A DNA stretch of 64,000 nt from Bugula neritina (lineage: Eukaryota > Animalia > Bryozoa): assembly GCA_964035545.1 (NCBI GenBank), contig OZ037769.1:17328633-17392632 (forward strand), in the 5' to 3' direction. The translations under genes were made by a program, and so were the position numbers. The notes beneath the pieces are model-generated. The model made no database searches. It was not told the DNA's origin and was given only the letters and a program-made list of their open reading frames with translations. Below are positions 1 through 64,000 of this stretch, one piece after another (position 1 is the first letter of the stretch; every line of letters starts with the position of its first letter).

Positions 1-566
1 CGAACCGGTTCCGAAAGTGCAAACCCTCACGGAGGGAGGGGCTCCATCCAGAGAACAGGAAAAAGTAACCACTACCGGTGAATTAGAAGCGCCACCAGAG
101 GCCCCTACTAGCCGGTGAGTGCGCCACCTCCCCTAGAGTGGGGACAACGTACGAGGCAACCCCCATCATATTCAAAAGATTTCGTATGTGACTGCATGCA
201 AAGCGGCGCGTATGAAAGTCTAGAGGGGAACCATACGAGAAAAGTATCGAGCAATTGTAGGAATTGTCAGCACCACGGGAATATCAACTTTTGCATCGGC
301 GGATTTAGAAATAAAATTCATTCGCCGAGTGTGCAAAGTCCTAGTCACGCACCCCAACCATGTTGCTCGATCTTTTCTCACGCTGATGCAGTCAAGAGCA
401 GACGTGCTTCTAGTCACTAGTACAAACCATTCACAAACATTCAGTACGTCATACAATACCGGATCGTGGGGTGAGTTAGCTATGTTCCTGATATGGAAAC
501 TAGATTGCATCACTCAGCTCTGACTCGACTGAGTCAATCGAGCTGGAGATAGGCTAGTGAACTGTA

Positions 567-1489
567 GTGGTAGGAACTCAGATTGACTTAGAGATTTCAC
601 GATCTCACTGCAGTATGTGTTCTCTTCCAACTATTCACTACCGTAAATCTCTGCGAGTGTTAACCGAACGGGAAGTTGTCAGGCTGTTTAAGGCCGACAA
701 CACTACAGTGTATGTTACTAATGCTGTTGAAACTCTTTCAGGTTCCACTCGGCCCGCTACAACCAGGGTACGGGATAGAGCACCTCCCGCTCCGCACCAC
801 GAGGAGAATGTCAATGACAGACTACCCGGGCCACTGCGCCGCCGCTGGCGGTGGGTGTCGCCAGAGACGGAGAGGAAAATAGAGGCTGCATGGGGACCCA
901 AAGAGAGTACACAGTGCCAACTCTGTTATGAGGATAGCCCGTCTCACCGCGCACTAAGCTTACACGTGGACGCCCACTACCTCCTGACATTCTGCCCCTG
1001 TGGACACCACGACATTTATCCATACCCCGTTATTAGACATCGAGCAGCTGGATGCTTTCCGGGGGAAAACTACGTGGTGGATGCTGATCTATACCCGAAA
1101 TTCTTAGTACTAATACGGCCTTTTGTGAGGAAAGCGATGCTGTTGGCCGTTTTGACTGCCGGGTTCCAGCATGTGATAAAATACGCTCGACAACAATCCT
1201 CGATGGTATCGGACAGACCCAGATTACATACACCCCTGAAAAAATCACCTACTCGGATGCGGAAGAGGAAGTCACACCTCCCCCTCGTAAAGTCCCGACC
1301 CCATCTCCAGACCGTACTCGTCTTGCTACTGTAGAGGAGCGGCTCCTTCGGCGACAGGCTGAATTTACTCAGTTAGCACCAGACCTACTCAGTACCACAA
1401 CAGGACTTTATCAATTAAAGGGCTCCGTGGGCCAGATTAAACGGAAATTACGTGCCCGTCGAGCCAAACATCGGCTCTTCAAACCCTGA
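567..1489 (+). pseudogene. Frameshifted accessory ORF of the LTR element, with C2H2-like zinc finger and basic/coiled C-terminus
   Basis: ORF 567-1334 contains CQLC-x12-HVDAH and CPCGH. Frame +2 from ~1220 continues QITYTPEK...RKLRARRAKHRLFKP* to TGA 1487-1489. Confidence 0.55.
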
Positions 1490-1784
1490 CTCTGGTTCTC
1501 TTGCCTGGAATGATTCGTAAGCCTTACCCTCTTGGAAGTGCTTGACTACAACGCTGTGATTGTGTAAATGCTCGACAGCTCATCTTCCTTGTCCGCTACC
1601 ACAGCTAGCGCTACTCTCTCTATAGCTAGCCAATTGTATGTGACGTACTGTTATAATGATTATGTCTGTCATTGTTATATATATATATATCTGTCTGTAT
1701 TTTTATGTTTTGGTCTACTGATATTATGTGCGCTGATTTTAAAATTTTTGTATCAGAAAGAGGGCTTTCTGCTGGTGGGGGCGG

Positions 1785-2358: not shown

Positions 2359-5300
2359 ATGGGTCAACTCATTTCTGTCCTCAGACGCAAACCAAGTAAG
2401 TAAATCATATAAATATAAATACCACTTAACTAGTGACTACAGAACTTGTATATTCTACTTGTATGTGTGTTGACTTTTGAGGTGCAGTAGTGGAGAAAAT
2501 GAGCTAGCATAAGTTCCTTTATTTTCTTAGCAAATTTGAGGATGGGTGCTGGTTGAAATTCAGAACATAACTTCTTTTGCTCTTTCCTGATTTGGAAACA
2601 CAGGCTTTCTCACTTTTATGCGTTATATATTACCTCTGTTTTCATCACAGCTGAGTATTATGTTGCTTGTCCTCACCTATATCCTCACCTATCTCCGCTC
2701 TTTCCTGTTCAGGTAGCGGGTTGCTGCCGGAGGCCTAGCTCAATTCGGCTGCTCAACCTAACCCTGTCCCGAGCATCCTCTTCATTGACGGAGCACGATT
2801 GGAGATTTTTTCTGATTGTATTCTGCCATCCATGCTTTGGGCGTCCCCGGTCTCTCTTTCCTCGAATTCTCAACTCATGCACTCTTCTGATATCATCCTT
2901 TTAATTTCTCTCTTTTGCATAATATAAGTCCAAACCACTGCAACTTTCTTCTCATCAATTCTAACACATTCATTACTTTCACTTTTTACCTTATGCTCTT
3001 GTTTAGTTTTTTTAAGACTTTCTTGTAGCATAGCACCGCGGTCAGCTCTCTACATTTATCCCAGGCTCTGCCAATTCGCACTTATACGTCTGTCCTGCAT
3101 CTTCCTGGTGGATTGTAGTTCCCAGATCATCTGCAAACAGCAAGCTCTATGGTGTGTCTTCAACATTGTCATCCGAGATAACATCCATTATAATTATAAA
3201 AAGGAAAGGGCTTAGGGCTGAGCCCTGGTGTAGTCCAACTTCCAGTCTTATTTCTCCTGTCTCTCCCGCATTTGTTACTACTATTGCTGTTGAGTCCTTG
3301 TACATATCCTTGATGATACTGATGTAAGCTTTGAGTACATAGTATTTCCTTAAACAACCTTGCTTGTGTTTATTACATAATGTTGTATATTAACTTATAT
3401 TATACTACACTATAGCTGTTAGATACTGACCTATATTATACTATACTAATATTAATATACTTATATTATAATATACTATAACTATTAAGCTAACCTATAT
3501 CGTACTCTATTTATATGTATTATATTATATTACGTTATACTATATACAATCAATTGTAATATTATATTACAACGCAGAGAATTATAAAAACATGGCCGCA
3601 CCTTTTTACCTGTCATCTGCTGTAGTTGAAGTCTGCACCAGCTACAAGGTTGAGTCATACTGTTAGGTTATAGTCTGACAACTTAGTGGGTATACATTCA
3701 GATTATGTCACAGGATTTGGTTTGGAGTTATAAAATCTCAAAGTTTACTTCAATACTGTTTATAGTGTGGAGACATATATTCTGTTATTTGATATCAATG
3801 TTATTATTCATATAGTGGTGAATATTTTGTAGAGAAGTACAAGGTGTGGTTCAACACATCCAGTATAGATGGAGCTTATGATGAGTGGATGGAGAGAATG
3901 ACTACATCCTACACTATAGAAAAGATCAAGAAGAGAACTAGACATCATACAGTGACTCATGTTAGACTGGAGGATGATATTCCTCCAAATATGAACACAC
4001 TGTTTCCTCATCTCACACATCTGAGGGTATCTAGAGTACACAGAAATGCTGACTGGACCAGGTATACTAGTGTCATAACATAAAGCTATATTCAATAAGT
4101 GACATATTATCTAATTGTAGTAGAATGTGGAGTAATCTCCCCTCACAATAACACTACCTTTAGTAACAACTGTTGTATTGTTTGCCTGGGTTATTATATT
4201 TCTATTTATTATTCAATTCAGTTTAATGGTAATGAATCTCATTCAAACTAATATGTGATTTAAATTATATTATAGAGTACGTTGAATACTGCAATACCTG
4301 TGTGTTATGTTACAGTATATGTTCACTGAAGAATCTTGAGGTATTGAATATATCATATAATAACCTATCTGAAGGTTTACCTGACAATATATTCACATCC
4401 TTACTATCATTGAGAGAGTTGAATATGAGGGCCTGTAAACTTCCAACTCTACCAAACAGGTGTGTATTATATTATAGTGTAGAATGGTACTGTAATAAGT
4501 ATAAGTTATAAATATATTATAGATATGATTAGGTAGGAGTGTATGGTATTTTTAATATAAAACATTTCACACCTGTGTGCTATGTTACAGCATATCTTCA
4601 CTGAAGAATCTTGAAGTATTGCATATATATGGGATTAACCTATCGGAAGGTCAACTTGACACTATATTCACATCCTTACTATCATTGAGAGAGTTGGACA
4701 TGTGGAACTGTAAACTACCAACTCTACCAAACAGGTGTGTGTTATATTATACATTATGAAGTTGTCTGCACTATCTTTATTGAGTCAACTAGACTCTGTG
4801 TATACGACACGTCATAAGACAACTATTCTATTCTATCAGATGTACTCAGATAGAAATGGTACCACAACTTCTCACTTATTACTCTAATAAATTCATTGAT
4901 AATTAAATTGTTTTGTTACAAAATGAACTCTATTGAGACTTACCTGAGAGTTGTATATTGTAAGGTATAGAATTTTTAGAGAACGTAATGAATAGAAGAG
5001 AACTAACAAAATAATCATTTTCAGCCGTAATTATGAAACTCTCATAGATTTAGATACTGAGATATAATATAATATTATACTGAGATATATTATAATATAT
5101 TATACTGAGATATATTATAATGTTAAATACTGATATATATTATAATACTATACTGAGATAGATATATAATATTATAATGTTATACTGAGATATATTATAA
5201 TATTATACTGAGATATATTATAATATTATACTGAGATATATTATAATATTATACTGAGATATATTATAATATTATATACTGAGATATAATATGGCAGTCA

Positions 5301-8300
5301 ATCAACTGTTACCTAGTGATGCATTGTATCATTTACCTACTCTTTTGTATCAAATAACTGGGAGTAGAACTCCTAACAGCTAGAAAATATTATTGTTTTT
5401 ATACTATGCATTGCACAATCTTATATATTTATTATAATTATGAATTGTATTATGGAACTCCAATGTTTATTTTTGTGCAAACCCCATATTTGAAACATCA
5501 AATATATTTTATATTTATTAGCATGCAGAGTCTACAGAAGTTAGAGAAACTGAACATATCAGATCACAACTTCACCAGTTTACCATCTCCTGTGTACTCA
5601 CTGAGTAGTCTGCAGGAACTGGATATCTCTCGTAATTACTCCCTGACATCCTTAGATTCTGAGATACTACAGCTAACTCAGCTTCATACACTGCATGTTG
5701 AAAGATGTGATGCTCTCGCATCTCCTCCACTAGAAGTATGTGAGAGAGGAGTAGATGCTGTGAGACAATATTACACAGACTTAGCTAAAGGTGCTGGTAG
5801 AAGTCTACCATTTGCTACTATAGCTGTGCTGGGTAATACGATGGCCGGAAAGACCAGTCTAATCAGAACATTACAGAATGCTGACAGAAAGAGAGTTCTG
5901 ACCAACAGAGGTCCAGATGCTGTGAGAGATGAGACAACAAAGGTGTTTAATGTTGAAGAGGTGGAGGTGGATGGTACAGTACTCCGTGTCATTGATATGG
6001 GAGGCCAGGAGGTCTACCATATCACCTATCAACTGACACTGAGACAGAATTGCATCCCAGTCATAGTAGTCAACATGGAGCAGTATGATAAGATTTCAAA
6101 TAAATCAACACACAGAGAAGCTGCTAGAAGATTAGCATTTGATTACATGTCTCACCTCTATCTGGCTAACCCAACTCTTGGTCCACCAAAACTTATCTTC
6201 ACCCATAAAGATAAGTTTCAAAGTACAGAGTTTCAGAAGCTTAAAGAAAACTTTCTAGAAACTTCAAATCGACTGTGTGAGGAGATGATTAAGGAAGAGA
6301 AAGCATTGGGTGGAGAATTTGCTCGAATCAAACATTTCAGTGAAGCAACTGATGGAGTCTTTCTTGGTGAGGACATTTATGAGCTGGGAAAGGATGATAA
6401 GTATGAAGTGTTTGACCTGATCAAGAAGTCTCTTCTTCGAAGCAGTCAACATTTTGTAAAACCTTTACCTCTTATCTGGGAGAAAGTGAATGAAAAAGTG
6501 CTGTCTATTCCCTCTGTGTACAGCACCTTTGATGAGACACTAAAGTACGTACAAACAGAACTTCAACACATTGAGTCAAGTCAGCTGGACATAATCCTCA
6601 CATACATGCATGACTGCGGCAAAGTCTTGTGGTATAAAGATATCAGCTGTCTCAGGCCATACCTATTCCACAAGATTTCAGAAGTCACCAAACTCCTCTG
6701 TGTCTTGTATCATCATGATCCTAAGATCTGGCAGAGTAGAGTTGACCAGTTCGAGCCATACTATTCACAGACTGAAGTACGTGTCGAGAAGCAAGACTTT
6801 GAGAAATCTGTCAATAATTTCACTGACACTTGTTTGATGATGCAGTCACTTCTTTTTTATTTCATTGAAAATGAGACATCATTCAGTAGCTCCAAGGATG
6901 TAGAAGTTGCCGTCTGCTTACTCCAGACGTTTCGTTTGCTGCACGGTCCAATACATGGCGAGTCTGAAGAGCCGTGGTTCATTGTACCTCAGTTTGCTAA
7001 AAACTACTACAGCACCTCCTACTCCTCACCCAAAGACATGCGTCTTCAAGTGGAGACACAGTTCAATGGTCTAGCCCTGCCACAATATGTCTACCACCAG
7101 ATGACGGTCGGTTTGTTGGAATCGTTCCCAGATGAGTTTGCTGTGATGGAAGTGAAGAGAAACGGAGCCAATGTCTATCAAGATGGAATCTACACACAGC
7201 TGGTACATGATTACAAATCTAGAAAAGTGTCACTCCACGTGTCATCCAATGCTGCCAACATCAGCAGAATGTGGGAGAGACTCATCACGACCAACAACAA
7301 CATCCTTAGACATGTTCTAGAAACCTGGACAGCAAGTAGAGCAGTCACTACATGCTACTGTGCTCACTGCCTTTTGCTAGGACTTCCTTGTCCTAAGAAA
7401 GTACTCCATCCTCCGTGGTGTCTTCGCTCCTTGAAACATCCCACACCAAGTCCCAGACTGTGTGGTGGATCTTCAACAACTCTGTGTGGTGATGAGGAGA
7501 TACTGAGTGCTCTTCTCTATCCATGTATGTTTGGTTACATTATGGTGCAGTGCGTGTAATAGCTTTTATTTCACTCTAATTTACCACATAATTTAGAATT
7601 GAATTGAGTTAATCCTCCCCATTCCTTGGTATAATTGGGGTTAGAAAAATATAGTGAGTTGGAATTATTTATTATATTTTCAAGTATTTCAAAATTTTAG
7701 GTAAAACACTGTCCGAGAAAGAAGCTGATAAGTTTGAGAAGTTTGTGAAGGAACTGAATCTTCGAGGAGCTCAAGGAAAATTAGCTAATTCTGGTAAATA
7801 CCAAGTTAGCAGCTTGTGCAAGCGTGTGTTTTTTAAATGTTAATTAATTTCAACTTGAGCGATGAATTATTCTACTGCATTTTATTTCATACCATGTCAA
7901 CAGTTTTTTTAGGAATGTGTATAATTTAAAAATTTAACTTTATTTTGCAAATTAATGAAAGCATTTAGTTTTATATAGTGAAGCAATGAAAGCATATTAC
8001 TGAATTACAGCTGAGTACTAATTTGCCAATCTTTGTATTTCTTATTTATTCCATGATGTGATATGAATTTGTACTTTATAGTTGCCAACAGTAGCCAATC
8101 AGATCTCCCGACCTCCACAATAACAGCCAATGATGATCTCAGTGATCTCTCTGATGATGATGAGAATCTGTACCCTGATAGAAAGGAAGTTGAAAATATG
8201 AAGTTTATAAGACTCAGACTGAATCCCACCAGTAACCCAAAGATAAGACAGCTGTTCTCAAACACTGACAAGGTGATCACTTCTAATGTCTATGTCCTTT

Positions 8301-10016
8301 CTTCTTGCTGGTTGTTTAGTTCAGCAGTGACACGTATTTCTCTGTTACATCCAGGTGTTTACTATGACTAGAAAAAGAGGAAGAGCTCTGATAATAAACA
8401 ACATAAACTTTGAGAAGAGACCAGATTTGTGTAGGAAAGGTTCAGATGTGGATGTAGAGAATTTGTCCACCATGTTGAAATATCTCAAGTTTGATGTTGT
8501 GACACACACAGATCTGAAGGCTGAGGTATTTCTTGTTGCTGTTTACTTATCAAGTTAAAAACTTACTCCTCTGTTAGTTTACAAACTCTACATATGTATA
8601 CAGAATACGATTTAAGGGTTTACAGTTCTTACAGTTTTCATGAATTTCAAAAAGATGTTCAATTTAACATAGGACTTCCGCCATCCCAATTTCATTATTT
8701 TACTTCCTGTTGTAGAAGATGCTGTCTGCTGTAAAATCTGAGGTGAAAAAAGAGGAACACGAAGATCTGGGATGTCATGTGTTGGTTATCATGACTCATG
8801 GAGGGCTGAACAACCACATCTATGGTACAGACCTGAAACGAGTGAAACTAACAGATGTGTATGACCTTCTGACCCCTTTGAACTTCCCTGGAATGGCTGG
8901 CAAACCAAAGGTTGTTATACTGGAAGTCTGTAGTGGAGGTAATGAATTTATAAAACATTTGTGGTCACTGCAGAGTTGTGTTCTCTTGACTGTTGAGTAA
9001 TTCTTACATGTTTGACACTGTTTATGTTCATTATATGAAGTAAATATAAATGTTTTTATATCTCTCACAGAGAGGAGTGATTATGGCCAAAGAGGTATAG
9101 ACAGATTTGATATCGGAGAATCACAGAAGGAGGGGGAGAGTATCTCACCTTCACTTGCTAAAGTTCCAGGAGACAAAAATGCTGAGGCTATGAATAGACT
9201 GAACTATGATGACCTGCTAGTAGTGAAATCTAGCATGGAGTGTAAGTAAGACACATGTAATGGAGTACAAGTTACTGGATCCATGGTATTATTCTGTATA
9301 ACTAGTCAACTAGTTGTATTTCCAATAGTTGAATAATTTATATGATTGATTCTACTTGTAGCATTCATATCAAAAAGTCACCCTGAGTATGGATCTCTAA
9401 TGGTTAGAGCTCTTGTATCTTCCATGTATAAACATGCCTGTCACCATGACCTCTACACTATATTCAAACAGGTTAATGTATTGCACTTTGTTACACTTAT
9501 AAGCATAGAGAACTGATGAAATTGAAAATGGCGCAAAATAATATTAGCTGTTGGCCAACTTGAATAATTTTAGGAGTAAATATTTATAATTATTTTACAG
9601 TTTGTTGTAGAGTATTCACAGTTTACTTGTGTTATAGTGTAGGTATTTTTATGGTGTAGGTACTGTTATAGTGTAGGTATTGTTATAGTGTAGGTATTGT
9701 TATAGTGAAGGTATTGTTATAGTGTAGGTATTGTTATAGTGTAGGTAATGTTATAGTGTAGGTATTGTTACAGTGTAGGTATTGTTATAGTGTAGGTATT
9801 GGCTATTTAGAATAATATGGTATGGAATAGTAATAAGATTTCACTGTTTATTTGCTTAACATTCTTCAGGTACAGACTAAAGTGAGAAAACTGTGTTTAG
9901 ATAAAAATCTAGAGAGTGGAGGACAGCTGGTTGTAGTCTGGGATACTCTCACTCATATGAGAAAACTTTACCTGTTTCCTGGGTTTAATGGCTACTCAAG
10001 AGAAGATGACTCTTAG
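2359..10016 (+). CDS. LRR-ROC-COR (ROCO) protein fused to a C-terminal caspase (peptidase C14) domain, ~1220 aa, 12 coding exons
   Basis: Exons 2359-2395, 3833-4061, 4316-4459, 4591-4734, 5522-7524, 7701-7793, 8082-8272, 8355-8525, 8716-8938, 9071-9241, 9362-9471, 9870-10016 are all GT-AG and phase-compatible (3663 nt). ROC: GNTMAGKT, IDMGGQEVY, THKD. COR-like: YMHDCGKVLWY, FIVPQ. Caspase: RGRALIINN, RKGSDVD, IMTHG, GKPKVVILEVCSG, YGS, KLYLFPG. Confidence 0.88.
2670..3365 (-). mobile_element. Decayed RTE-type LINE 3' fragment in the first coding intron of the ROCO-caspase gene
   Basis: The minus strand encodes remnants such as GKRDRGRPKAWMAE. Its 3' end (...RIELGLRQ..., ATAGGTGAGG tail) parallels the RTE copy at 18760-19975. 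Confidence 0.6.
5052..5292. repeat. Intronic AT-rich minisatellite (~22 bp, TATACTGAGATATATTATAATAT)
   Basis: Direct tandem copies visible. Confidence 0.85.
9630..9800. repeat. Intronic 17-bp tandem repeat (GTTATAGTGTAGGTATT)
   Basis: Direct tandem copies. Confidence 0.85.
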
Positions 10017-18086: not shown

Positions 18087-18759
18087 GGCGAAAATGTATA
18101 ATTTTAGCAAAGATAAAACAGATAAAATTGTAAACGTCTACACTTGAGGTATAATATCGTTAGAAATTAAAAATAAATGTTGACATTATTTTCACGTGTC
18201 TAGGAATCAAAACCGGACGTACTTATTGCCTTCCAACGGTTAAAGTTCACACTCGTTGTCAAATTATATTAAATCTTAAGCTAGGGCGTCAAAGTATTTC
18301 CATCAAGCTAGGTTAAGGTTATTTACTAACTAGATATTTATAGTTTTTCAAAAAAGAGTTTAAAATGTACATTTTTTACATATCTGATATCTAGGTGACT
18401 AATAATAATTATGTTGCATTAACAATTTGTATCATTATGTGCAACTTATGTTGCTTTTGGCGTTATGATTATCAAGTAATAGAGTATCTGTTATCAGTAT
18501 CACTCTCACTGTACACTGGTGACCTGACCAGTGACTGTACTGTGTACACTCAACACTGTACAGTGTGAGTGTATGAGACTGAGTATCACTATCAGTAAGA
18601 GTATCAGTATCACTATCAGTTATCAGTATTACTAAATGACTAATACTATCACTATGGTACTGGTAGTAACTATGATATAACATTAGACTTAGTTATTAGT
18701 GTTATAAAAATCTTTATATTAGTTATTACTATTAGTATTAGTATTACTATGAGTATTAG

Positions 18760-19975
18760 TGGAGAATAGGATTAGAGGCTTGGTAAAAATATCAGACAGG
18801 CAATATGGATTCCAACCCGGAAAGTCAACAGTACAACCAATGTTCTGCCTCCGGATGTTACAGGAGAAGATGAGAGAATATCAAACAGACCTCCACATGG
18901 TATTCGTTGATCTTGAAAAAGCGTACGACACGGTGCCACGAGACCTCATATGGTACTGTTTAAGAAAAAAAAGTGTACCAGAGCAGTATGTTAGGATTAT
19001 TCGGGATATGTACAAGAACTGCACTACATCAGTTACAACCAGCGAAGGAGCAACAGAAGAGATAGACATCGAAGTGAGGTTGCACTCGGGATCTGCGTTG
19101 AGTCCTTTCCTGTTCATAGTCATATTGGATGTAATCTCAGAAAAAATAGACGAGAAAATACCGTGGGCAATGCTCTTTGCAGATGACCTAGTTATCTGCG
19201 ATAGAGAGGGAGAAAGGGTAGAAGAGAGATTAGAGGCATGGCGTGGACATCTAGAGGACGCAGGTCTCAAGGTGAGCCGGAAGAAAACAGAGCATCTTCC
19301 ACCAAGGGAAAGCACCACCAGGATCAGAATGAAAAGATATGACCAGGAGGACTACACTGAGCTACAAATAAGTTCAAGTATCTGGGGACAGTGATAGATC
19401 AGGATGGAGGCTGTGAGGCTGAAGTCACAAGAAGAATAAGTGCAGCGTGGGATAGATGGAGGGACCTATCAGGAGTTATGTGTGATAAAAAAGTGCCTAA
19501 ACAACTGAAGGTATTACTCTACAAAACAATCATAAAACCAACACTGATATATGGCAATGAAACATGGCCCATCACCCAGAGGCAAGAACAAAGGATAGAG
19601 GCAACCGAAATGCGAATGCTCAGACACATATATAGAATAAACTGGGAGGATCATGTTGGGAATGAAGACATAAGAAGCGAAGCTAAGGTTAAACCTGTGT
19701 CTAGGTATATGAGGAAGAGAAGACTCCAGTGGTATGGTCATGTGCAGAGGAGAGATAGTGAAGAGGATATTAAATATGTGACTGAGTTGAAAATAGTGGG
19801 GAAGAGAAAGAGAGGACGACCCAAACGAAGATGGATGGACACGATAGGAGATGACATGAAGCGATGGGATCTTAAACCGGAGGAGGCAGAAGACCGGGAA
19901 AGATGGCAGACGCTGATAGAGATTGGAAACCTGCAGACCGGTCACCCGTACAGGACTATGACCGCATAGGTGTGA
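18760..19975 (+). mobile_element. 5'-truncated RTE-clade non-LTR retrotransposon (RT fragment, one frameshift) with 17-bp TSD
   Basis: RT motifs QYGFQPGKST, FVDLEKAYD, GSALSPFLF, LFADD; C-terminal RLQWYGHV and GKRKRGRPKRRW. Frameshift near 19370. TSD ATTACTATGAGTATTAG at 18743-18759 and 19976-19992. Confidence 0.92.
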
Positions 19976-36659: not shown

Positions 36660-39600
36660 TCAACTCTGCAGATGTTTCTGAATGAGTATTTTGAGGTTGT
36701 AGTTGGGGAGGAGGATGTTTGCTGTCAGAGGAGCGTTAGTCATCGGACTGGATGTCTTTCCGGCAGCCATCCAAGACAGCATGGCACTTTTCTCATACGA
36801 ATATCCGTCTACAAGAAAGTATCGCAGTAAATGTACCTCTTCAGTGCGAGAGTATTACACCAACACTCAGTGGACATGTGGAGTTGTCACCTACCTGAAG
36901 CTACCACTGGCTCCTTCATTATCTCATGAGTGATTGGACAAGTGAACTCGTGAGCAGTATCACGGGTGGGGGTCACGCCGTCCCCTACTGCACTGCTTTG
37001 GGTTAGTAACTGGTCTAAACCTCTCATGATTTTGTTCCTGGCTCCATACGCACCTGGTGGAAGTATATCGTATCATATATGTGTGATACTTATGATATGT
37101 GTAATACTTATGATATGTGTAATACTTATGATATGTGTAATACTTATGATATGTAATACTTATGATGTGTAATACTTATGATATGTAATACTTATGATAT
37201 GTGTAATACTTATGATATGTGTAATACTTATGATGTGTGTAATACTTATGATATGTAATACTTATGATGTGTAATACTTATGATATGTAATAGCTATGAT
37301 ATGTGTAATACTTATGATATGTGATACTTATGATATGTGTAATACTTATGATGTGTGATACTTATGATATGTAATACTTATGATATGTAATACTTATGAT
37401 ATGTGATACTTATGATATGTGATACTTATGATATGTGTAATACTTATGATATGTGTAATACTTATGATATGTAATACTTATGATATGTAATACTTATGAT
37501 ATGTGATACTTATGATATGTGATACTTATGATATGTGTAATACTTATGATATGTAATACTTATGATATGTGTAATACTTATGATATGTAATACTTATGAT
37601 ATGTGATACTTATGATATGTGTAATACTTATGATATGTAATACTTATGATATGTGTAATACTTATGATGTATATATTACTGATAGGAAGTACGAATGATT
37701 TATCCATTCATAATGACAGAATAAGTTACTGATCAGAGTCGTCACACCAATATACATAGAAAATATTCCCTAAAGCTTTCTACATCAAAAAGCTAAACTG
37801 TGATTGCGTCAGTTTCCGTAGAGCCTACACGGTAGGGGTGGGAGAGCTCGCCAACCTACCAACGCCAATCTCCGTCTCCAGCACCTCTTTAGTCAGATGC
37901 TGCAGTTCGCTGCCGTCTATGTCGTGCTGCCGGAAACTGCCGGTATGTTTACCCAGTCCGAGACTGCTCAGCCAGTGGCAGACGTCCTCTACAGACCATG
38001 TGGTCAGGTCAGCTGCAGGAGCCAATGGCTGGCTGGTCCCATGACTCACAGTGACTGCTGATTGGCTGGAAGTTAGTGTGTCTGTTTGCTGATTGGCTGG
38101 TTGGCCCAACTGAATGAGGTTAGGGGTCACACCTGCAGGAGATAGGAAGAGTTAATAGGCGAGAGTTGGTACAGACAGGGGGGGGGAGAGACAATACTTA
38201 GAGCATGTATTATAAACATGAGAAAATGTATAAACAGTATCTCCGTTGATAACAAATATACACTGAGAATTTCTATCTATTCCACTTTAAATTGCTTTGC
38301 TTTCACCTGATTCTTGTTCCTGTTCAGTTGGCAGAGAAAAAGAAAATCGAATACATAGAGAAGTTCAAGGATTATGATTCAATAAACAGGCAGTAAATGG
38401 GGTGTAAACAGGTTAATGACTAACAACATACCATTATTCACCAGCTTTTATATTATAATGGTATGTTAGAGCAGTTGGCAGTTGCTATGGCAACACATCT
38501 TTATTATTATTTATTGCAGTTGAAGATCAGTCAAGGAAATACATGACACAGTAGAGTATAGGGTGAGCATAGCAAGCAACAGGACTGAGAGAGAGAGAGT
38601 TGGTGCTAAGTGAGTTAGGTGAGTTATGTACAGCTTTCATAGGTGTAGCTTTGTAACGACACACCTGATACAGAGGTGGCATTGCGATGGTACACATGAT
38701 ATAAAGGTGATAAGGTAGTGTTACGGTGATACATACAGAGATGGAAATATACCTGATAATACCACATCAATTATTCTCCAATTATTTCAAGTCAACTATG
38801 TTGCCTGAACAACATTTTTCGAGGAGCAAATATTTTCAGGATAAGTCATCTTTAACATGTGATAACTTCTTAAATATATGACATGGCACTGCATTTACAC
38901 AAGAGAGTTATGTTTCTACAATGACCACAAGTTTTATCCATTATCCGTCTTATTGATTTGCGATCATGGCTGAATTGAATGGCTGAATAGGTGATTGTCT
39001 TTACTCAAAGCACTTTTTACCCTGCCCTATTCAGCCTTTATAAATATTATATGCTGCTGTTGTTATGCTTTAGTTGGCCTGTAACTTGATCTGTGGCTGT
39101 AAGCAATTGTCACGTGACAGTGCGGGTACATGACTATAAGTTAATAAGTACCAGCACAATATGACCCTCTGGTCCATATGTTACGCACCAGCAGTGGGAC
39201 TTGAGATCAATTCACACAAATGTTACAGCTCAGACTAGTTTATATCTAACGGCATTATTATAAAGGTTAGTATTTCAAGTCTGTTGTATTGAGAAATGTC
39301 AGTGTATAGAGATTGTCATCTACTAGGGTTGTAGTGTCTGTGTAGTAATTAGCTGCATGTTATATCTCTACACTGTCTCCTCATACTTGTACATGTCTTG
39401 GATTTACTTCTTTCAGTTCACCAGACTGAGCTGAGGAGTGAGCAGTTGAGTGCCATCTACAGCGTGAAAGTAGACAGTGGACAGGCAGCAGTGGAAAGGC
39501 GGTGGCAGCAGAGCTAGCAGTGTGCTCTGCGATGTTAAAGAGTCTAACTAGTAATGTCACCTATAAATAAATTCAACCAGTTAGTCACGGTTGAGATAAT

Positions 39601-42600
39601 CACCTTTCTCTTCTGCTTCACTATTCCGATTATTCAGTTCGCCGTACAAGACCTCCTCTACGTGAAACTCTGTCTCCAGAACGAGAACACCACCGACAGT
39701 CTGTGTCACGATAGACAATGGATAAACAAACACAAAGAAACCGAAGGGAAGACATCTTTGTGGATCATGTATATCAACATCGCTATCGTAATACCTGCCA
39801 TCATTTCTTCCATATTCCAGGGAAGCTATATTGACAGGTTCGGCTTCAGTTTGCCAACACGTCTACCACTGGTTGGAATCACCATAGCCTGTGGGGTGTC
39901 AGCAATTGTAGCCTTGACAAACGTGCGGCACGAGCTCCTTATTGTAGGCATGGTCTTGATGGGGGCGTGCGGACACACCCCCGCCTTTATGATGGCGGCA
40001 AATGCGTATGTAGTGAAAGACGCAAGTGGTGAGAAAAATAAGACACTACGCCTAGCCATAGTTGGCTCGTGTCTTGCCATAGGCATATCTGCGGGGACAG
40101 CCGTGATTGGACCAATCTCAGACCATCTAGGACTATACTGGGTGTTTCTGATTGGTCTGTTTAGTTCATTACTAGCTCTACTAGACAGTGTGCTGAGAGT
40201 GAGACCTCCGAGACATCAGCCACCAGCACCACATGGCAAACACTTTCTCACTAAACTGAAGGAAACGTTTGAACTACGGACCATGAAATCCTACATCAAG
40301 GTGATGACTAGAAGTAGAGAACATTCCAGAAGGTTACACATGCATCTGATGACTCTAGTATTTGTGATCTCCTTCTGTGCCCTCATAGGGGTGGTGGACG
40401 TGGAGTTCTTGTACCTAACAAAGGAGAAAGGCTTCACCACCACCCAGGCTAGTATATTCATGAGTGTAGCCATGCTGCTCATGTTCTTTGGTAAAACTCT
40501 CGGTACGTATGTACTTAGCTCCAAACTCGGACTGAATCTCATTTACATAACAATGATTGGCTCCCTCAGTGCAGTAATAAACTATACCGGCTTTTCATTG
40601 GCTAACTCTTTCGCAGCTCTGTGGGCCTCAAATGTGTTCAAAATGTTCAGTGGCTTGAACTCAGTAATGACAAGATCGTACGTGAGTGGATGCGTGGAGA
40701 TGAACGAGCAAGGAACCATTATTTCATTCATGTCGGTCACGGAGGCCATATTCAAACTGATAGCATCGTTTGTGTTCAACGGACTATACCCACTTACGCT
40801 GACAACGTGGCCGGGAGCCATGTTCATGGTGGCAGCAGTGCTGTGTGTCAGCGGAATACCTGTACTCGGCTTCATCAGGTGGCATGAGCTGGGAACAGGT
40901 GCTAAGTACGTCATAATGAGTGAAGACGGGCAGATGATGGTGGATGATAACTCCAACTCCAAGTCTGATTCCAACTCAAAGTCTGACGATATTGAAATAC
41001 AAACTTTGTAGAGTACTAGCACTGCTAGTAGTAGTACTGTTAGTATTAGTACTGATAGTATTAGTACTGTTAGTATTAGTACTGTTAGTATTAGTACTGT
41101 TAGTATTAGTACTGTTAGTAGTAGTACTGTTAGTAGTAGTACTGTTAGTATTAGCACTGCTAGTATTAGTACTGTGAGTATTAGTACTCATAATACTAGT
41201 GGTATTAGTACTAGTACTGTTAGTATTAGTACTGTTAGTACTAGTACTGTTAGTATTAGTACTGTTGGTATTAGTACTGTTAGTATTAGTACTGTTGGTA
41301 TTAGTACTGTTAGTATTAGTACTGTTAGTACTAGTACTGTTAGTATTAGTACTGTTGGTATTAGTACTGTTAGTATTAGTACTGTTAGTACTAGTACTCA
41401 CACTAGTAAGTACTCGGATTACAAATACTATTATCACTGAACTCTCAAAGAATAAACTGAAATATAGATGTGTTAGTTAAATCTTGAAATACTCACCTCT
41501 GAGGTTGAGGGTGTCGGTGATCCCCCACACCTTTACTGTCCTGTCACAGGAACACGTGTATATCTGCTTGTCGTCTGCGCTGAATGCCAAACTGTTGATG
41601 AAACTGCAAGATATTCACAGGAAATCTTAGAGTAGAGTTAGCATAGTCTCTAAGAGATAACTCGTAATATATGAACTTGTTTATAATTAGAATCTCTCTA
41701 TTTATGTGCTTATTCATGTCCTTTATATCAGAGATACTGTTTTATATCAGAGAAACTGTTTTATATCAGAGATACTGTTTTATATCAGAGCGAATATTTT
41801 TGTAACAAACCATAAAAATATTGATGAAAAACATAAACCCGTGAAATACATTCCTCCACTGCTCAGGAAAAAGATACTATTAAGGGAACAGTAGAGTTGG
41901 TGTAGCATTTGTTACTATAACTACACTATAATATATTACCTCAGTAGCCAAAGAGCCAGCTGTTACATTATGACATGCTACAAACTGATAGTATTGACTT
42001 CAGCTGAGAGGTGCAAGTATATACAACATATCGTGTGTAAGACTAAACACAGTGCTACACAATACAACTGGTAGGGGGGGGGGGGTATGTAGGGGTGGAT
42101 ATGTAGGGGAGGGAGAGGGGGATACGTAGGGGTGGATGTGTAGGAGGGGAGGGGGATACGTAGGGGTGGATATGTAGGGGTGGATATGTAGGGGAGGGAG
42201 AGGGGGATATGTAGGGGTGGATATGTAGGGGAGGGAGAGGGGGATATGTAGGGGTGGATATGTAGGGAGGGAGAGGGGGATACATAGGTTATCATCTCAA
42301 CTTATACAACTAATACAAAGCAGCAAAAGTGACACAAAATGCTGCCTGTCGCATATAGCGGAGGACCAATAGTGATAGTTGAACATGTACGGGGCGTGGA
42401 GCACCCCTCTCCCTCCCAACTCGCTGTGTTCTACTGACTCCACGGAATATAGAAAAGCAGAGCAGTACAGAAGAGATAAGAAAATTTCAAGTGGTCTTCG
42501 ATAGTAGAATTAGTTGTGTAACAGAGAAGTTATTCCCCCTTGACAATACTAGTGTGCCTAGTCATATGCAAACCTTTGATCTACGTGAATGTTTGTAAGG

Positions 42601-62435: not shown

Positions 62436-63869
62436 ATGTCTTTCACTGAGAAGAGTAATACCACTAAATCAGCTGGAGACAAGATGGCCGACGTACAACT
62501 CAACACGTCCTATCTGATACCGTTAGTCAGCGCTCTAGGTGGAGTAGTGTTGGTGCTATCTGTAGTGCTGGCTGTCATATTCTGTCGAAGATACACGAGA
62601 AGCAGACGTATGAGAGAAGCAGATGACATCAAGGTGAAGGTCATCAAATCAACTCTCTCTGACAATCATTTGGAGTCTTCAGACCGACTTAGTAGTTTCT
62701 CAAGTTCGTCAACTACAGTAAATGAAGACAGTTCGTTGTCCTTAGGGCGTAGGAATGAGCAGCCCCAGAAGTTAATAAATCATGCCCCAGTTCCCGGGCT
62801 ACATAACATCCCGGTGAGACAGAATTCTTCCCCTGAGAGCCCCAAGTCTCCTTCCTGTGAGTTGATGATTGGAGGAGACGACTACGTGAACGACACGAGT
62901 TTTGCATTGCGCATTGTCCCGCCTCCACCGGACTCTAAATGTCCTTCACCTCCGACACCACCTGACGTGACTGTATCAGACTCGACGGCTGTCTTATCCA
63001 CTCCCGATCTCCCAAGAATCAAGGGTCGGAGGTCAAAAAATGGGCCACTCTCGCCTAGTTTACTCGCTAACAAGGAGGCAACGCTACAGAGAGCTTCCGG
63101 TCTCTTCCGCTCCGACACAAAGGCACACGAGTTCTACACCAAGACTATCACCAACTACGAGATGAACAGAAGTCAGCTGCAGTCTGTTAGGATGATCGGG
63201 AAGGGTCACTTCGGCTGCGTGTATTCTGGGAAGGCGAGTAAAGTGCCGAACTCGAGACAGAGGAATCTGAAGGTGGCCATTAAGACGATGAAAAATTCCT
63301 CCCCGGACAGTGAGAAGCAGGAGTTCCTGTACGAGGTGGAGATAATGAAGTTGGTGACGTCACTCAACCACCCCAACATCATCAAACTCCTGGGCTGCGT
63401 GACTAAGACTCAACCTTACCTCATTGTGCTCGAACTCATGAGTAATGGCAACCTGCAGCGATTTCTCCGCGACACGAAGACAGGGGATGTGTATTACAAC
63501 TTACATGATGATAGTGACAGTATTACTGAGCAACACCTAGTCAAGTTTGCTCTGGACATATCCAAAGGTATGGAGGGAATAGCCGACCTTCAGCTCCTTC
63601 ACCGTGACCTCGCTTGCCGGAACATTCTCATAGACCAGCACTTGACCTGTAAGGTGGCCGACTTTGGGTTTGCCAAAGACGTGCTGAACAAGCCGGAGTA
63701 TCAGAGCAAGTCGGTATTCCAGAGACCCCGCCCCACAAGATGGCTGCCCCCAGAGTCTCTCTTCACCTTCAAACACTCTATTCAAAGTGATGTCTGGTCT
63801 TATGGGGTCGTGTTGTGGGAGATTGTGACGCTAGGCAACCTTCCCTACCCACAGATGAGCTGTAAAGAG
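62436..63869 (+). CDS. Single-pass receptor-type tyrosine kinase with minimal ectodomain (first coding exon; continues beyond the window)
   Basis: TM segment LIPLVSALGGVVLVLSVVLAVIFC followed by RR; GKGHFG, VAIK, HRDLACRN, DFG, RWLPPES, SDVWSYGV. Donor GAG|GTAGGT at 63869/63870. Confidence 0.9.
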
Positions 63870-64000
63870 GTAGGTTCTTAGACTATGTAGTGTAAACAGC
63901 TAAGTTCTTGGTAAGAATGCATAAAATTGATACCTTACTGGGTAATATTGGTCGTGATGGAAATGAGATTTGTTTTGTGTGAATATTTTAAGACCGTACA

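What the first reader, a model, noticed from the sequence alone, without database searches (positions are those of the whole stretch)
2359..10016. One polypeptide joining LRR sensor, ROC-COR GTPase switch and caspase protease: candidate adaptor-free inflammasome/PIDDosome-like system
Seen: 12 GT-AG exons splice in frame, with no stop, from LRRs through an intact ROC (P-loop, D-x-G-G-Q, THKD) and COR into a full p20+p10 caspase fold with His (MTHG) and Cys (EVCSG). The ~100-aa linker has no recognisable CARD/DED/death domain. Known: COR domains mediate nucleotide-regulated dimerisation in ROCO proteins (LRRK2, bacterial Roco); initiator caspases are activated by induced dimerisation; caspase-2 (KLYLFPG C-terminus, as here) is normally recruited by the LRR protein PIDD via RAIDD. 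Inference: ligand binding or GTP state could dimerise and activate the protease directly, making a single-chain immune/death receptor. I do not know of a described animal ROCO-caspase fusion but cannot search for one. The ORF track shows only disconnected pieces, so automated annotation could split it.
Basis: partly seen in the sequence, partly recalled or inferred. Interest (0 to 1): 0.95.

Follow-up and report, generated by a model that had tools for sequence, protein, structure and literature searches.

The report
LRR-Roc-COR GTPase fused to caspase
This is a real, expressed animal gene (most likely bryozoan) that joins a leucine-rich-repeat sensor, a Roc-COR GTPase switch and a caspase-type protease in one 1,220-residue protein. 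It is one of at least 66 such genes in this genome, but the same design already sits unremarked in amphioxus and Watersipora gene sets and has been described in bacteria.

Summary
Twelve GT-AG exons (2359-10016, + strand; four boundaries corrected by 1-35 nt) give one 3,663-nt frame of 1,220 aa. Exon 5 folds confidently (pLDDT 91.6) as LRR-Roc-COR; its best structural matches are LRRK1, C. tepidum Roco and LRRK2. Exons 8-12 are an animal-type caspase with His and Cys present.

RNA-like contigs show five splice joints, including 7793/8082. The key joint 7524/7701 was not displayed. It is supported indirectly:
- The 93-nt mini-exon has conserved AG/GT sites and is open in the predicted frame in 15/15 paralogues.
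- Its dN/dS is 0.48, and this copy has no ATG in it.
- 61 of 66 paralogous Roc-COR exons have a caspase exon within 4.3 kb downstream on the same strand.
- RefSeq models of Watersipora subatra and three amphioxus species encode the same fusion.

The architecture is therefore not new. Amphioxus 'LRRs-caspase' genes were reported in 2008 and bacterial LRR-Roc-COR-caspase proteins in 2021. I found no paper on the bryozoan expansion, and no member has been tested.

The S1 pocket is non-canonical (EVCSG; the Arg341 equivalent is Ser), so Asp specificity is doubtful. The caspase-2/PIDD link is unsupported, and the dimerisation mechanism remains inference. The scan had already found this family on other DNA of this genome.

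The parts
2359..2395 (+). Exon 1: start codon and 12 codons (MGQLIS...), phase-1 donor. MG-x-x-x-S fits the N-myristoylation consensus.
   Evidence: Frame check. The exon with about 60 nt upstream recurs in at least 20 copies in the genome. ATG-GGN-CAA, the sixth-codon Ser and the donor are identical in 8/8 aligned copies.
3833..4061 (+). Exon 2: family-specific N-terminal region running into the first LRR; phase-2 donor.
   Evidence: 73 copies in the genome at E<=1e-3, lying upstream of Roc-COR exons at variable distances. No Pfam family.
4316..4459 (+). Exon 3: 144-nt symmetric (phase 2/2) LRR cassette exon.
   Evidence: Pfam LRR_1, LRR_8 and LRR_4; frame.
4591..4734 (+). Exon 4: second 144-nt LRR cassette, a tandem duplicate of exon 3.
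   Evidence: Pfam LRR_4. 11 of 47 residues differ from exon 3, clustered on the x positions of LxxLxLxxN.
5522..7524 (+). Exon 5 (2,003 nt): three LRRs, Roc GTPase, COR-A, COR-B and a Cys-rich tail ending ...YPC; phase-1 donor GTATGT.
   Evidence: Pfam Roc and LRR. AlphaFold2 pLDDT 91.6, pTM 0.91. Foldseek: LRRK1 8e05 (1.5e-22), C. tepidum LRR-Roc-COR 6hlu (7e-22), RocCOR 3dpu, LRRK2, COR 3dpt. At least 66 full-length copies in the genome. An RNA loose end before 5520 reads like the end of an LRR exon.
5832..5855 (+). Roc P-loop (G1) GNTMAGKT.
   Evidence: Sequence. G104, G109 and K110 are invariant or nearly invariant in 54 relatives.
5994..6008 (+). Roc switch II (G3) DMGGQ.
   Evidence: Sequence. 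D158, G160 and G161 are nearly invariant.
6201..6212 (+). Roc G4 motif THKD.
   Evidence: Sequence. T227 and D230 are nearly invariant.
7701..7793 (+). Exon 6: 93-nt symmetric (phase 1/1) linker mini-exon with no in-frame ATG in this copy.
   Evidence: RNA joint 7793/8082 in X2. AG/GT conserved and the frame open in 15/15 paralogues, with stops in both other frames in 15/15; only 3-nt indels; dN/dS 0.48.
8082..8272 (+). Exon 7: acidic, Ser-rich linker leading to the caspase domain.
   Evidence: RNA joints 7793/8082 and 8272/8355. No Pfam family. 69-95% identical in the 14 type-A loci L001-L014.
8355..8525 (+). Exon 8: start of caspase p20, with the Arg179 equivalent (CRKGSDVD).
   Evidence: Pfam Peptidase_C14, 4.4e-10. 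Alignment to the ancestral caspase-3/6/7 and to a chain deposited as 'Caspase' (3sip); caspase-7 is in the hit table.
8716..8938 (+). Exon 9: caspase p20 core with catalytic His (8797-8799, MTHG) and Cys (8929-8931, EVCSG).
   Evidence: Pfam Peptidase_C14, 8.4e-11. Alignment to CED-3 and caspase-8 puts EVCSG on QACRG/QACQG. RNA joints on both sides.
9071..9241 (+). Exon 10: inter-subunit linker region.
   Evidence: RNA joints 8938/9071 and 9241/9362. 75-98% identical in the 12 of L001-L014 where it was found.
9362..9471 (+). Exon 11: caspase p10 part. ISKSHP aligns to caspase-1 VSWRHP, so Trp340 becomes Lys and Arg341 becomes Ser.
   Evidence: Weak Pfam hit (0.027). Caspase-1 p10 alignment at E 0.04. 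Paralogues carry S, R, V or I at this site.
9870..10016 (+). Exon 12: end of p10 (…KLYLFPG…) and the stop codon TAG at 10014-10016.
   Evidence: Collinear with the C-termini of the Watersipora fusion proteins. An RNA loose end behind 9473 reads like a paralogous copy of this exon. No solved caspase matches it on its own.

Best explanation
Shown: positions 2359-10016 (+) hold one 12-exon gene for a 1,220-aa cytosolic protein. In order it carries an N-terminal MGxxxS motif (probably a myristoyl membrane anchor), a short LRR arm (two cassette exons plus three repeats), a Roc GTPase with intact G1/G3/G4 motifs, COR-A/COR-B, a roughly 95-aa acidic linker without a death fold, and a caspase-fold protease (p20+p10) with the His-Cys dyad. 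It belongs to a family of at least 66 genes in this genome, which is most likely bryozoan. The same architecture occurs in Watersipora, amphioxus and bacteria.

Inferred: it works as a one-chain sensor-switch-protease. The LRR arm binds a ligand or guards a target. The Roc-COR module turns that into a nucleotide-dependent change of conformation or oligomeric state. That change brings or releases the C-terminal protease domains for proximity-induced activation, with no CARD/DED/DD adaptor. The likely output is cell death or proteolytic signalling in immunity or self/non-self reactions. Because Gln283 is replaced by Glu and Arg341 by Ser in the S1 pocket, the substrates are probably not cut after Asp as they are by canonical caspases.
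For: Gene structure:
- In-frame GT-AG model.
- Five splice joints in RNA-like contigs, including mini-exon to exon 7.
- Homology among paralogous ORFs stops exactly at ...PC, where the conserved GTATGT donor lies.
- The mini-exon is a conserved, gap-free island between indel-rich introns. It is open in frame in 15/15 copies, has dN/dS 0.48, and has no ATG in this copy.
- 61/66 Roc-COR exons have a caspase exon within 4.3 kb downstream on the same strand, and 66/66 within 16 kb.
- Watersipora RefSeq fusion proteins are collinear with the window; for XP_067948342.1 the COR-to-caspase gap is 95 aa in both.
- Amphioxus proteins run LRR-Roc-COR-B-Peptidase_C14.

Domains:
- Pfam hits exon by exon.
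- High-confidence model and Foldseek matches to LRRK1, CtRoco and LRRK2.
- GTPase motif residues are nearly invariant in 54 relatives.
- The caspase dyad aligns to CED-3 and caspase-8, and Arg179 is kept.
- MGxxxS is conserved in 8/8 copies.

Immune-receptor-like evolution:
- Large lineage-specific expansion.
- Variable number of LRR cassettes.
- Cassette differences fall on the LxxLxLxxN x positions.
- Caspase modules are exchanged between near-identical Roc-COR exons.

Precedent for the concept: PMC2575513 and PMC8195603.
Against: - The joint 7524/7701 was not among the RNA joints displayed, and no spliced cDNA-derived protein crossing it was found.
- In run X1 the mini-exon has no contig at all.
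- No biochemical or genetic data exist for any member.
- The COR homodimer prediction gave no verdict.
- In the bacterial Roco paradigm (my knowledge of the literature, not tested here), GTP binding favours monomers. The direction of any GTP control of protease proximity is therefore open.
- The S1 pocket is altered, and the Arg341 site varies among paralogues. This could also mean relaxed constraint.
- Contigs laid at 95-99% identity may come from paralogues or other strains, so expression of exactly this copy is not proven.
Confidence: 0.7

Rival explanations
1. There are two adjacent genes. A ROCO gene ends at the stop 7557-7559, and a separate caspase gene starts downstream, for example from the ATG at 8063 or the ATG inside exon 7. 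The apparent fusion would then be an artefact of frame-compatible neighbours that duplicated together.
For: The 7524/7701 joint was not displayed in the RNA contigs. The exon-5 ORF does run 11 codons further to a stop. An ATG at 8063 is in frame with exon 7.
Against: - RNA joins the mini-exon 7701-7793 to exon 7, so the caspase transcript starts upstream of 8063.
- The mini-exon evolves as coding sequence in the frame set by exon 5, and this copy has no ATG in it.
- The ATG at 8063 is absent from most paralogues.
- The read-through tails are unrelated between paralogues.
- Independent RefSeq models in Watersipora and amphioxus are fused.
Confidence: 0.05
2. It is a single fused gene, but in this copy the protease module is no longer a working death protease. 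With Gln283 changed to Glu and Arg341 to Ser it would act as a decoy, a regulator or a scaffold (as cFLIP does for caspase-8), or it would be a young paralogue drifting towards loss.
For: EVCSG replaces QACxG, and Ser sits at the Arg341 position. That position is S, R, V or I among close paralogues. Two relatives (L016, L017) have lost the catalytic Cys. This copy has only two LRR cassette exons, while paralogues have far longer arms.
Against: All 12 exons are intact over 3.6 kb. His, Cys and Arg179 are kept. Glu at the Gln283 position is conserved in 18 of 20 loci examined, which looks like a fixed change rather than decay. RNA-like contigs cover the exons.
Confidence: 0.15
3. It is a single fused, active protein, but its role is developmental or housekeeping rather than immune. 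Examples would be the cyclic degeneration and regeneration of zooids, metamorphosis, or membrane-trafficking control as in other ROCO proteins.
For: Caspases drive metamorphosis and tissue turnover in many invertebrates, and animal ROCO proteins (LRRK1/2, MFHAS1, DAPK1) have non-immune roles (general knowledge). No infection or allorecognition data were available.
Against: Several features are typical of conflict or immune genes and not of housekeeping genes: at least 66 paralogues, variable LRR cassette number, differences concentrated on the predicted binding face and effector-module swapping. The bacterial counterparts are interpreted as counter-invader systems.
Confidence: 0.1

Closest known systems
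Amphioxus LRR-Roc-COR-caspase proteins (the 'LRRs-caspase' hybrid genes of Zhang et al. 2008, PMC2575513; RefSeq/UniProt 'MFHAS1 homolog' or 'SHOC-2' entries of B. belcheri, B. floridae and B. lanceolatum)
   Same: The domain order is the same: LRR, Roc, COR, then Peptidase_C14 at the C-terminus with no death-fold adaptor. They were proposed as direct connectors between recognition and apoptosis. They belong to a family with interchangeable C-terminal effectors.
   Different: The amphioxus proteins keep the canonical QACRG and have long LRR arms. Their caspase parts are only 25-30% identical to those of the Watersipora relative. Whether the two phyla share one ancestral fusion or fused independently was not tested. 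The 2008 paper does not name Roc-COR.
Watersipora subatra (bryozoan) RefSeq models, e.g. XP_067947674.1 and XP_067948342.1
   Same: Closest annotated relatives. LRR-Roc-COR-caspase is collinear with the window exon by exon, with the same linker length. Several start with MG.
   Different: Only 30-38% identical in Roc-COR. They have QACSG/QACGG rather than E[VAT]CSG. They are automatic annotations with no publication found.
Bacterial LRR-AP-GTPase(Roc)-COR proteins with C-terminal effector domains, including caspase (Kaur, Iyer, Burroughs, Aravind 2021, PMC8195603)
   Same: Same three-part logic: a rapidly evolving LRR, a Roc-COR switch and a variable C-terminal effector that can be a caspase-like peptidase. 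A genome carries several paralogues.
   Different: They are prokaryotic, and I did not compare their caspase-like effector domains with this one. Here the protease exons match CED-3, caspase-8 and the effector caspases, and the gene is built from spliced exons with phase-compatible introns.
Animal ROCO proteins MFHAS1, LRRK1/LRRK2 and DAPK1, and C. tepidum Roco
   Same: The LRR-Roc-COR core has the same fold and the same G motifs.
   Different: Their output domain is a kinase (LRRK, DAPK1) or absent (MFHAS1), not a protease.
NLR inflammasomes, the apoptosome and the PIDDosome
   Same: The proposed logic is shared: a repeat sensor, a nucleotide switch and proximity-activated caspase.
   Different: Those use a STAND ATPase (NACHT/NB-ARC), or PIDD autoprocessing, and they recruit the caspase in trans through CARD/PYD/DD adaptors. 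Here the switch is a Ras-like GTPase, the protease is in cis, and no death-fold domain was detected.
Brown-algal LRR-ROCO candidate immune receptors (PMC11378527)
   Same: LRR-Roc-COR genes with exon-shuffled LRR cassettes, proposed as immune receptors (abstract seen).
   Different: I saw only the title and abstract, which describe no caspase effector; I did not read the paper's domain lists. They come from a different kingdom.

Membership tests
ROCO proteins | Roc (Ras-of-complex) GTPase domain | tested here: met
   Pfam PF08477, 31.5 bits against a cut-off of 27. P-loop, DxxGQ and THKD are present and nearly invariant in relatives.
ROCO proteins | COR domain directly after Roc (Roc-COR tandem) | tested here: met
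   Pfam COR-A is only 13.4 bits, below the cut-off. The pLDDT-91.6 model, however, matches LRR-Roc-COR of C. tepidum (6hlu, 7e-22), RocCOR 3dpu, the COR domain 3dpt (8.9e-11), LRRK1 and LRRK2.
ROCO proteins | Guanine-nucleotide binding, and COR-mediated dimerisation | tested here: inconclusive
   Nucleotide binding cannot be tested with these tools. The COR homodimer prediction gave no verdict.
Caspases (peptidase family C14A) | Caspase fold with p20 and p10 parts | tested here: met
   Peptidase_C14 on exons 8 and 9 (40.1 and 42.4 bits, cut-off 21.4) and weakly on exon 11. PDB sequence matches to CED-3, caspase-8/-7/-6/-3 and caspase-1 p10. Collinear with complete C14 domains of the Watersipora proteins. 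The joined domain itself was not folded, because it has no reference.
Caspases (peptidase family C14A) | Catalytic His-Cys dyad | tested here: met
   MTHG and EVCSG align to SHG and QAC(R/Q)G of CED-3 and caspase-8. Both are kept in 18 of 20 loci examined.
Caspases (peptidase family C14A) | QACxG pentapeptide and the Asp-binding S1 triad (Arg179, Gln283, Arg341, caspase-1 numbering) | tested here: not met
   Arg179 is kept. Gln283 is Glu. Arg341 is Ser, by a weak alignment at E 0.04. It is therefore caspase-fold, but Asp specificity cannot be assumed.
Inflammasome / PIDDosome / apoptosome components | STAND ATPase (NACHT/NB-ARC) or PIDD-type ZU5-UPA-DD, with a death-fold adaptor domain (CARD, PYD, DED, DD) | tested here: not met
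   None of these families appears on any exon scanned. The 30-aa mini-exon was not scanned, and the linker is about 95 aa and largely low-complexity. The resemblance is functional analogy only.
   Caspase-2 ranks below CED-3 and caspase-8/-6/-9 for the active-site exon. The C-terminal exon hits no solved caspase. There is no CARD.

The most novel reading that the evidence does not exclude
The bryozoan family could be a combinatorial germline repertoire of one-chain death or immune receptors. Variable LRR arms and alternative protease modules would be re-assorted by recombination in the phase-compatible introns. The breakpoint seen here lies right after exon 5. In the sub-family of this gene the protease has a rebuilt S1 pocket (Glu for Gln283, with a diversifying residue at Arg341). 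The effectors themselves would then have diverged in cleavage specificity, perhaps away from Asp. Such a system could underlie pathogen sensing or colony allorecognition in a phylum whose immunity is almost unknown.
Probability: 0.2. Interest if true: 0.8.

Novelty: new member of a known kind. Interest (0 to 1): 0.55.

Why it matters
Proximity-activated caspases are normally recruited through death-fold adaptors onto ATP-driven platforms. A protein that wires a repeat sensor and a Ras-like GTPase switch directly to the protease is a minimal natural version of that logic. No member has been tested in any organism.

This gene is short for the family, with only two LRR cassette exons and 1,220 aa. 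It is intact and lies under RNA contigs, so it is a convenient construct for asking three questions:
- Does Roc-COR nucleotide state control a protease?
- What does a caspase with Glu in place of the S1 Gln cut?
- What does the LRR arm bind?

The expansion to at least 66 genes also gives a handle on bryozoan innate immunity or allorecognition. The finding does not reveal a new architecture, because that already exists in databases and papers for amphioxus and bacteria.

Tried and rejected
- My first guess, a sponge (Amphimedon), came from the run labels and was dropped. The nearest annotated relatives are bryozoan (Watersipora subatra). I did not determine the species myself.
- My first exon model was out of frame at four borders. 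It was corrected.
- The search for homologous proteins on the end of exon 5 returned only genomic exon-5 ORFs from JGI metagenome contigs. No spliced cDNA-derived protein crossed the junction.
- Complex prediction on two copies of COR (residues 290-667 of exon 5) scored 0.00. This is no verdict, and it is not evidence for or against dimerisation.
- The C-terminal exon alone gave no solved-structure match, so the 'caspase-2-like KLYLFPG' argument was dropped.
- The ROCO reviews I searched (PMC6337361, PMC4104024) do not mention protease fusions. The amphioxus caspase paper PMC3196919 mentions neither LRR nor Roc.
It was assembled only inside local scripts to check frame continuity and exon phases. 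All searches were run exon by exon, by reference. As a result, the caspase domain of this copy was not folded.

Full report
**What is in the sequence**

Positions 2359-10016 of the + strand carry twelve exons with GT-AG borders. Joined, they give one open frame of 3,663 nt (1,220 aa) with a single stop at 10014-10016. My boundaries are 2359-2395, 3833-4061, 4316-4459, 4591-4734, 5522-7524, 7701-7793, 8082-8272, 8355-8525, 8716-8938, 9071-9241, 9362-9471 and 9870-10016. A first hand-drawn version was out of frame at four borders.

I assembled the joined protein only inside local scripts, to check frame and phases.

Pfam, run exon by exon, gives the following:
- LRR families on exons 3, 4 and 5.
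- Roc on exon 5 (31.5 bits against a cut-off of 27), with only a weak COR-A hit there.
- Peptidase_C14 on exons 8 and 9 (40.1 and 42.4 bits against 21.4), and weakly on exon 11.
- Nothing on linker exon 7.

**The Roc-COR core is genuine**

I built an alignment of 54 relatives. With it, exon 5 (667 aa) folds with mean pLDDT 91.6 and pTM 0.91. Its best structural matches are dimeric LRRK1 (1.5e-22), the LRR-Roc-COR crystal structure of Chlorobium tepidum Roco (7e-22), the RocCOR tandem 3dpu, many LRRK2 structures and the isolated COR domain 3dpt.

The P-loop (GNTMAGKT), switch II (DMGGQ) and G4 (THKD) residues are invariant or nearly invariant across the 54 relatives. This copy therefore looks competent to bind nucleotide. 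Binding itself cannot be tested here.

**The protease is an animal-type caspase fold with an unusual pocket**

The active-site exon matches CED-3, caspase-8, an ancestral caspase-3/6/7, caspase-6 and caspase-9 better than it matches caspase-2. The alignment places MTHG on the catalytic His and EVCSG on QACRG/QACQG.

The three S1-pocket residues, in caspase-1 numbering, fare as follows:
- The Arg179 equivalent is kept, in CRKGSD.
- Gln283 is replaced by Glu.
- In the p10 exon, ISKSHP aligns with caspase-1 VSWRHP, so Arg341 becomes Ser. This alignment is weak (E 0.04).

In 20 paralogous loci, Glu at the Gln283 position is present in 18. The Arg341 position is S, R, V or I. Two relatives have lost the Cys. 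The Watersipora and amphioxus relatives keep QAC[SGR]G.

From established caspase structural biology, two of the three Asp-binding S1 residues are therefore changed. This makes it a caspase-fold protease whose Asp specificity cannot be assumed.

**Is it really one gene? Direct RNA evidence**

Four public runs were laid on 5380-9600. Two (X15, X16) behave as DNA and cover the introns. Two (X1, X2, labelled RNA-Seq of a symbiont metagenome) leave introns empty; X1 has no contig in 7636-8058.

The RNA-like runs show GT..AG joints at 7793/8082, 8272/8355, 8525/8716, 8938/9071 and 9241/9362. A loose end in front of 5520 reads like the end of an LRR exon.

Contigs at 95-99% identity may also come from paralogues or other strains.

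**Is it really one gene? Comparative evidence**

The comparative evidence is strong.
- Database ORFs of paralogues share homology up to a conserved C-x2-C...W-C...P-C tail. They diverge into unrelated, variable-length tails exactly after ...PC, where all 15 aligned copies carry a GTA[TA]GT donor.
- The 93-nt mini-exon is a gap-free conserved island between indel-rich introns.
- Its AG and GT are conserved in 15/15 copies, and its length is 93 or 96 nt.
- It is open in the predicted frame in 15/15 copies, while both other frames have stops in 15/15.
- Its dN/dS is 0.48. Its p-distance is 0.28, against 0.43 in the introns.
- This copy has no in-frame ATG in the mini-exon, so translation must enter it from upstream. 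Exon 5 supplies the matching phase-1 donor.
- RNA joins the mini-exon to exon 7, which rules out a start at the ATG at 8063. That ATG is also not conserved.
- Genome-wide, at least 66 full-length copies of exon 5 were scored out of 158 candidates; 64 have no stop.
- By coordinates, 61 of the 66 have a homologue of caspase exon 9 within 4.3 kb downstream on the same strand. The count is 63 within 7.5 kb and 66 within 16 kb.
- RefSeq models of the bryozoan Watersipora subatra encode LRR-Roc-COR-Peptidase_C14 in one protein (XP_067947674.1 at 1,419 aa, XP_067948342.1 at 1,413 aa, and others). They are collinear with the window exons. For XP_067948342.1 the gap between the end of COR and the start of the caspase is 95 aa, the same as mini-exon plus exon 7 here.

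I put the two-gene alternative at about 5%.

**The 5' end**

Exon 2 recurs in 73 copies upstream of Roc-COR exons, at distances from about 1.7 kb (this gene) to more than 20 kb. The LRR arm therefore varies greatly in length, and this gene has one of the short arms.

Exon 1 with its upstream 60 nt recurs in at least 20 copies, about 950 nt before exon 2. Here the intron is longer because it holds a reverse-transcriptase fragment.

ATG-GGN-CAA, a Ser at codon 6 and the donor are identical in 8/8 aligned copies. MGxxxS is the N-myristoylation consensus, and several Watersipora relatives also start MGxxxS or MGC. A membrane anchor is therefore a reasonable but untested inference.

**How it probably works**

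Shown:
- The domain order.
- The intact GTPase motifs.
- The catalytic dyad.
- The absence of a detectable death-fold domain.
- The family expansion.

Inferred: the LRR arm senses a ligand or a guarded host target. Roc-COR converts this into a nucleotide-dependent conformational or oligomeric change. The C-terminal protease domains are activated by induced proximity or release from auto-inhibition, in cis and without an adaptor.

The direction of GTP control is open. A homodimer prediction for the COR part gave no verdict.

Four evolutionary features point to a conflict or immune role (or allorecognition) rather than housekeeping:
- The large lineage-specific expansion.
- The variable LRR cassette number.
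- Cassette differences that sit on the x positions of LxxLxLxxN (11 of 47 residues differ between exons 3 and 4, overall dN/dS 0.63).
- The exchange of protease modules, described next.

**Module exchange**

Roc-COR exons 82-86% identical to this one are followed either by a caspase exon 92-97% identical to this gene's, or by one only 44-47% identical. In locus L015 the tail of exon 5 is 90% identical, no mini-exon homologue is found, and the caspase carries QACSG. The exchange point therefore lies in the phase-1 intron right after exon 5, the same junction that creates the fusion.

**Comparison with what is known**

The architecture is not new.
- Amphioxus 'LRRs-caspase' hybrid genes were reported in 2008 as direct connectors between recognition and apoptosis, with QACxG intact (PMC2575513).
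- Present-day RefSeq and UniProt entries of B. belcheri, B. floridae and B. lanceolatum show LRR-Roc-COR-B-Peptidase_C14. These sit beside sister proteins that carry glycosyltransferase, OTU or death domains instead.
- Bacterial LRR-AP-GTPase(Roc)-COR proteins with C-terminal caspase, TIR, trypsin and other effectors were described as counter-invader systems in 2021 (PMC8195603).
- Two ROCO reviews do not mention protease fusions.
- I found no paper on the bryozoan family.
- Earlier follow-ups of this scan had already reported the family on other DNA of this genome, with the same count of 66. Another first-reader note had reported the S1 change on this very stretch. I re-derived both independently.

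**Verdict**

This is a real, intact gene that is probably expressed. It is a new member, in a new phylum and with a re-modelled S1 pocket, of a known but functionally untested kind of one-chain sensor-GTPase-protease.

It is interesting as an experimental entry point: it is short and complete, and it poses clear questions about GTPase control and cleavage specificity.

Noticed in passing
window 2709-3357 (- strand), inside intron 1: Fragmented reverse-transcriptase ORFs (RVT_1 on 3147-3302). This retroelement remnant explains why intron 1 is about 500 nt longer here than in paralogues (about 950 nt between exons 1 and 2).
   Followed up: partly
window 7359-7523: Conserved Cys-rich tail at the end of COR-B (C-x-H-C ... 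P-x-W-C ... C ... P-C). C613 and C616 of exon 5 are at least 90% conserved in 54 relatives, and the model has short strands there. It may be a small metal-binding element just before the protease linker. Not examined further.
   Followed up: no
L015 (G000:C1:33999201-34006401) and L016 (G000:C1:32582349-32591546): Roc-COR exons 84-86% identical to this gene's are joined to a different caspase type (44-47% identical, QACSG in L015). No mini-exon homologue is present. Effector modules are therefore exchanged at the intron after exon 5.
   Followed up: partly
L016 and L017 (G000:C8:8277527-8286724): These two family members have lost the catalytic Cys (ETYKG and EAASG in place of E[VAT]CSG). They are possible pseudo-protease or decoy members.
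   Followed up: no
window 7525-7556: The first 30 nt or so of intron 5 are almost as conserved among paralogues as the flanking exon (p-distance 0.30, against 0.43 for the rest of the intron). This could be a splicing signal or a short alternative read-through tail.
   Followed up: no
window 5040-5290 and 9620-9800: AT-rich tandem repeats inside introns 4 and 11. I kept them out of the stretch given to read laying.
   Followed up: no
window 1-1500: A GC-rich block (49-53% GC, against about 32% around the gene) directly upstream of the gene. It is probably a foreign or mobile insert. Not examined.
   Followed up: no
window 18759-19394, 39554-41011 and 62436-63881 (all +): Other large ORFs in the window: a reverse transcriptase (RVT_1), a major-facilitator transporter (MFS_1) and a protein kinase domain (PK_Tyr_Ser-Thr). 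No second ROCO-caspase copy lies in the window. The nearest one is about 20 kb upstream (L001, 91% identical in exon 5).
   Followed up: partly
P0159-P0190 (Branchiostoma proteins): In amphioxus the same LRR-Roc-COR-B chassis carries a caspase, a GT4 glycosyltransferase, an OTU or a death domain at the C-terminus. This is the same interchangeable-effector pattern that PMC8195603 describes for bacteria.
   Followed up: no
P0158 (Logan contig): A 1,028-aa ankyrin-repeat / RING / caspase protein turned up as a distant hit. It is another adaptor-free caspase fusion design, also noted by earlier agents in this genome.
   Followed up: no
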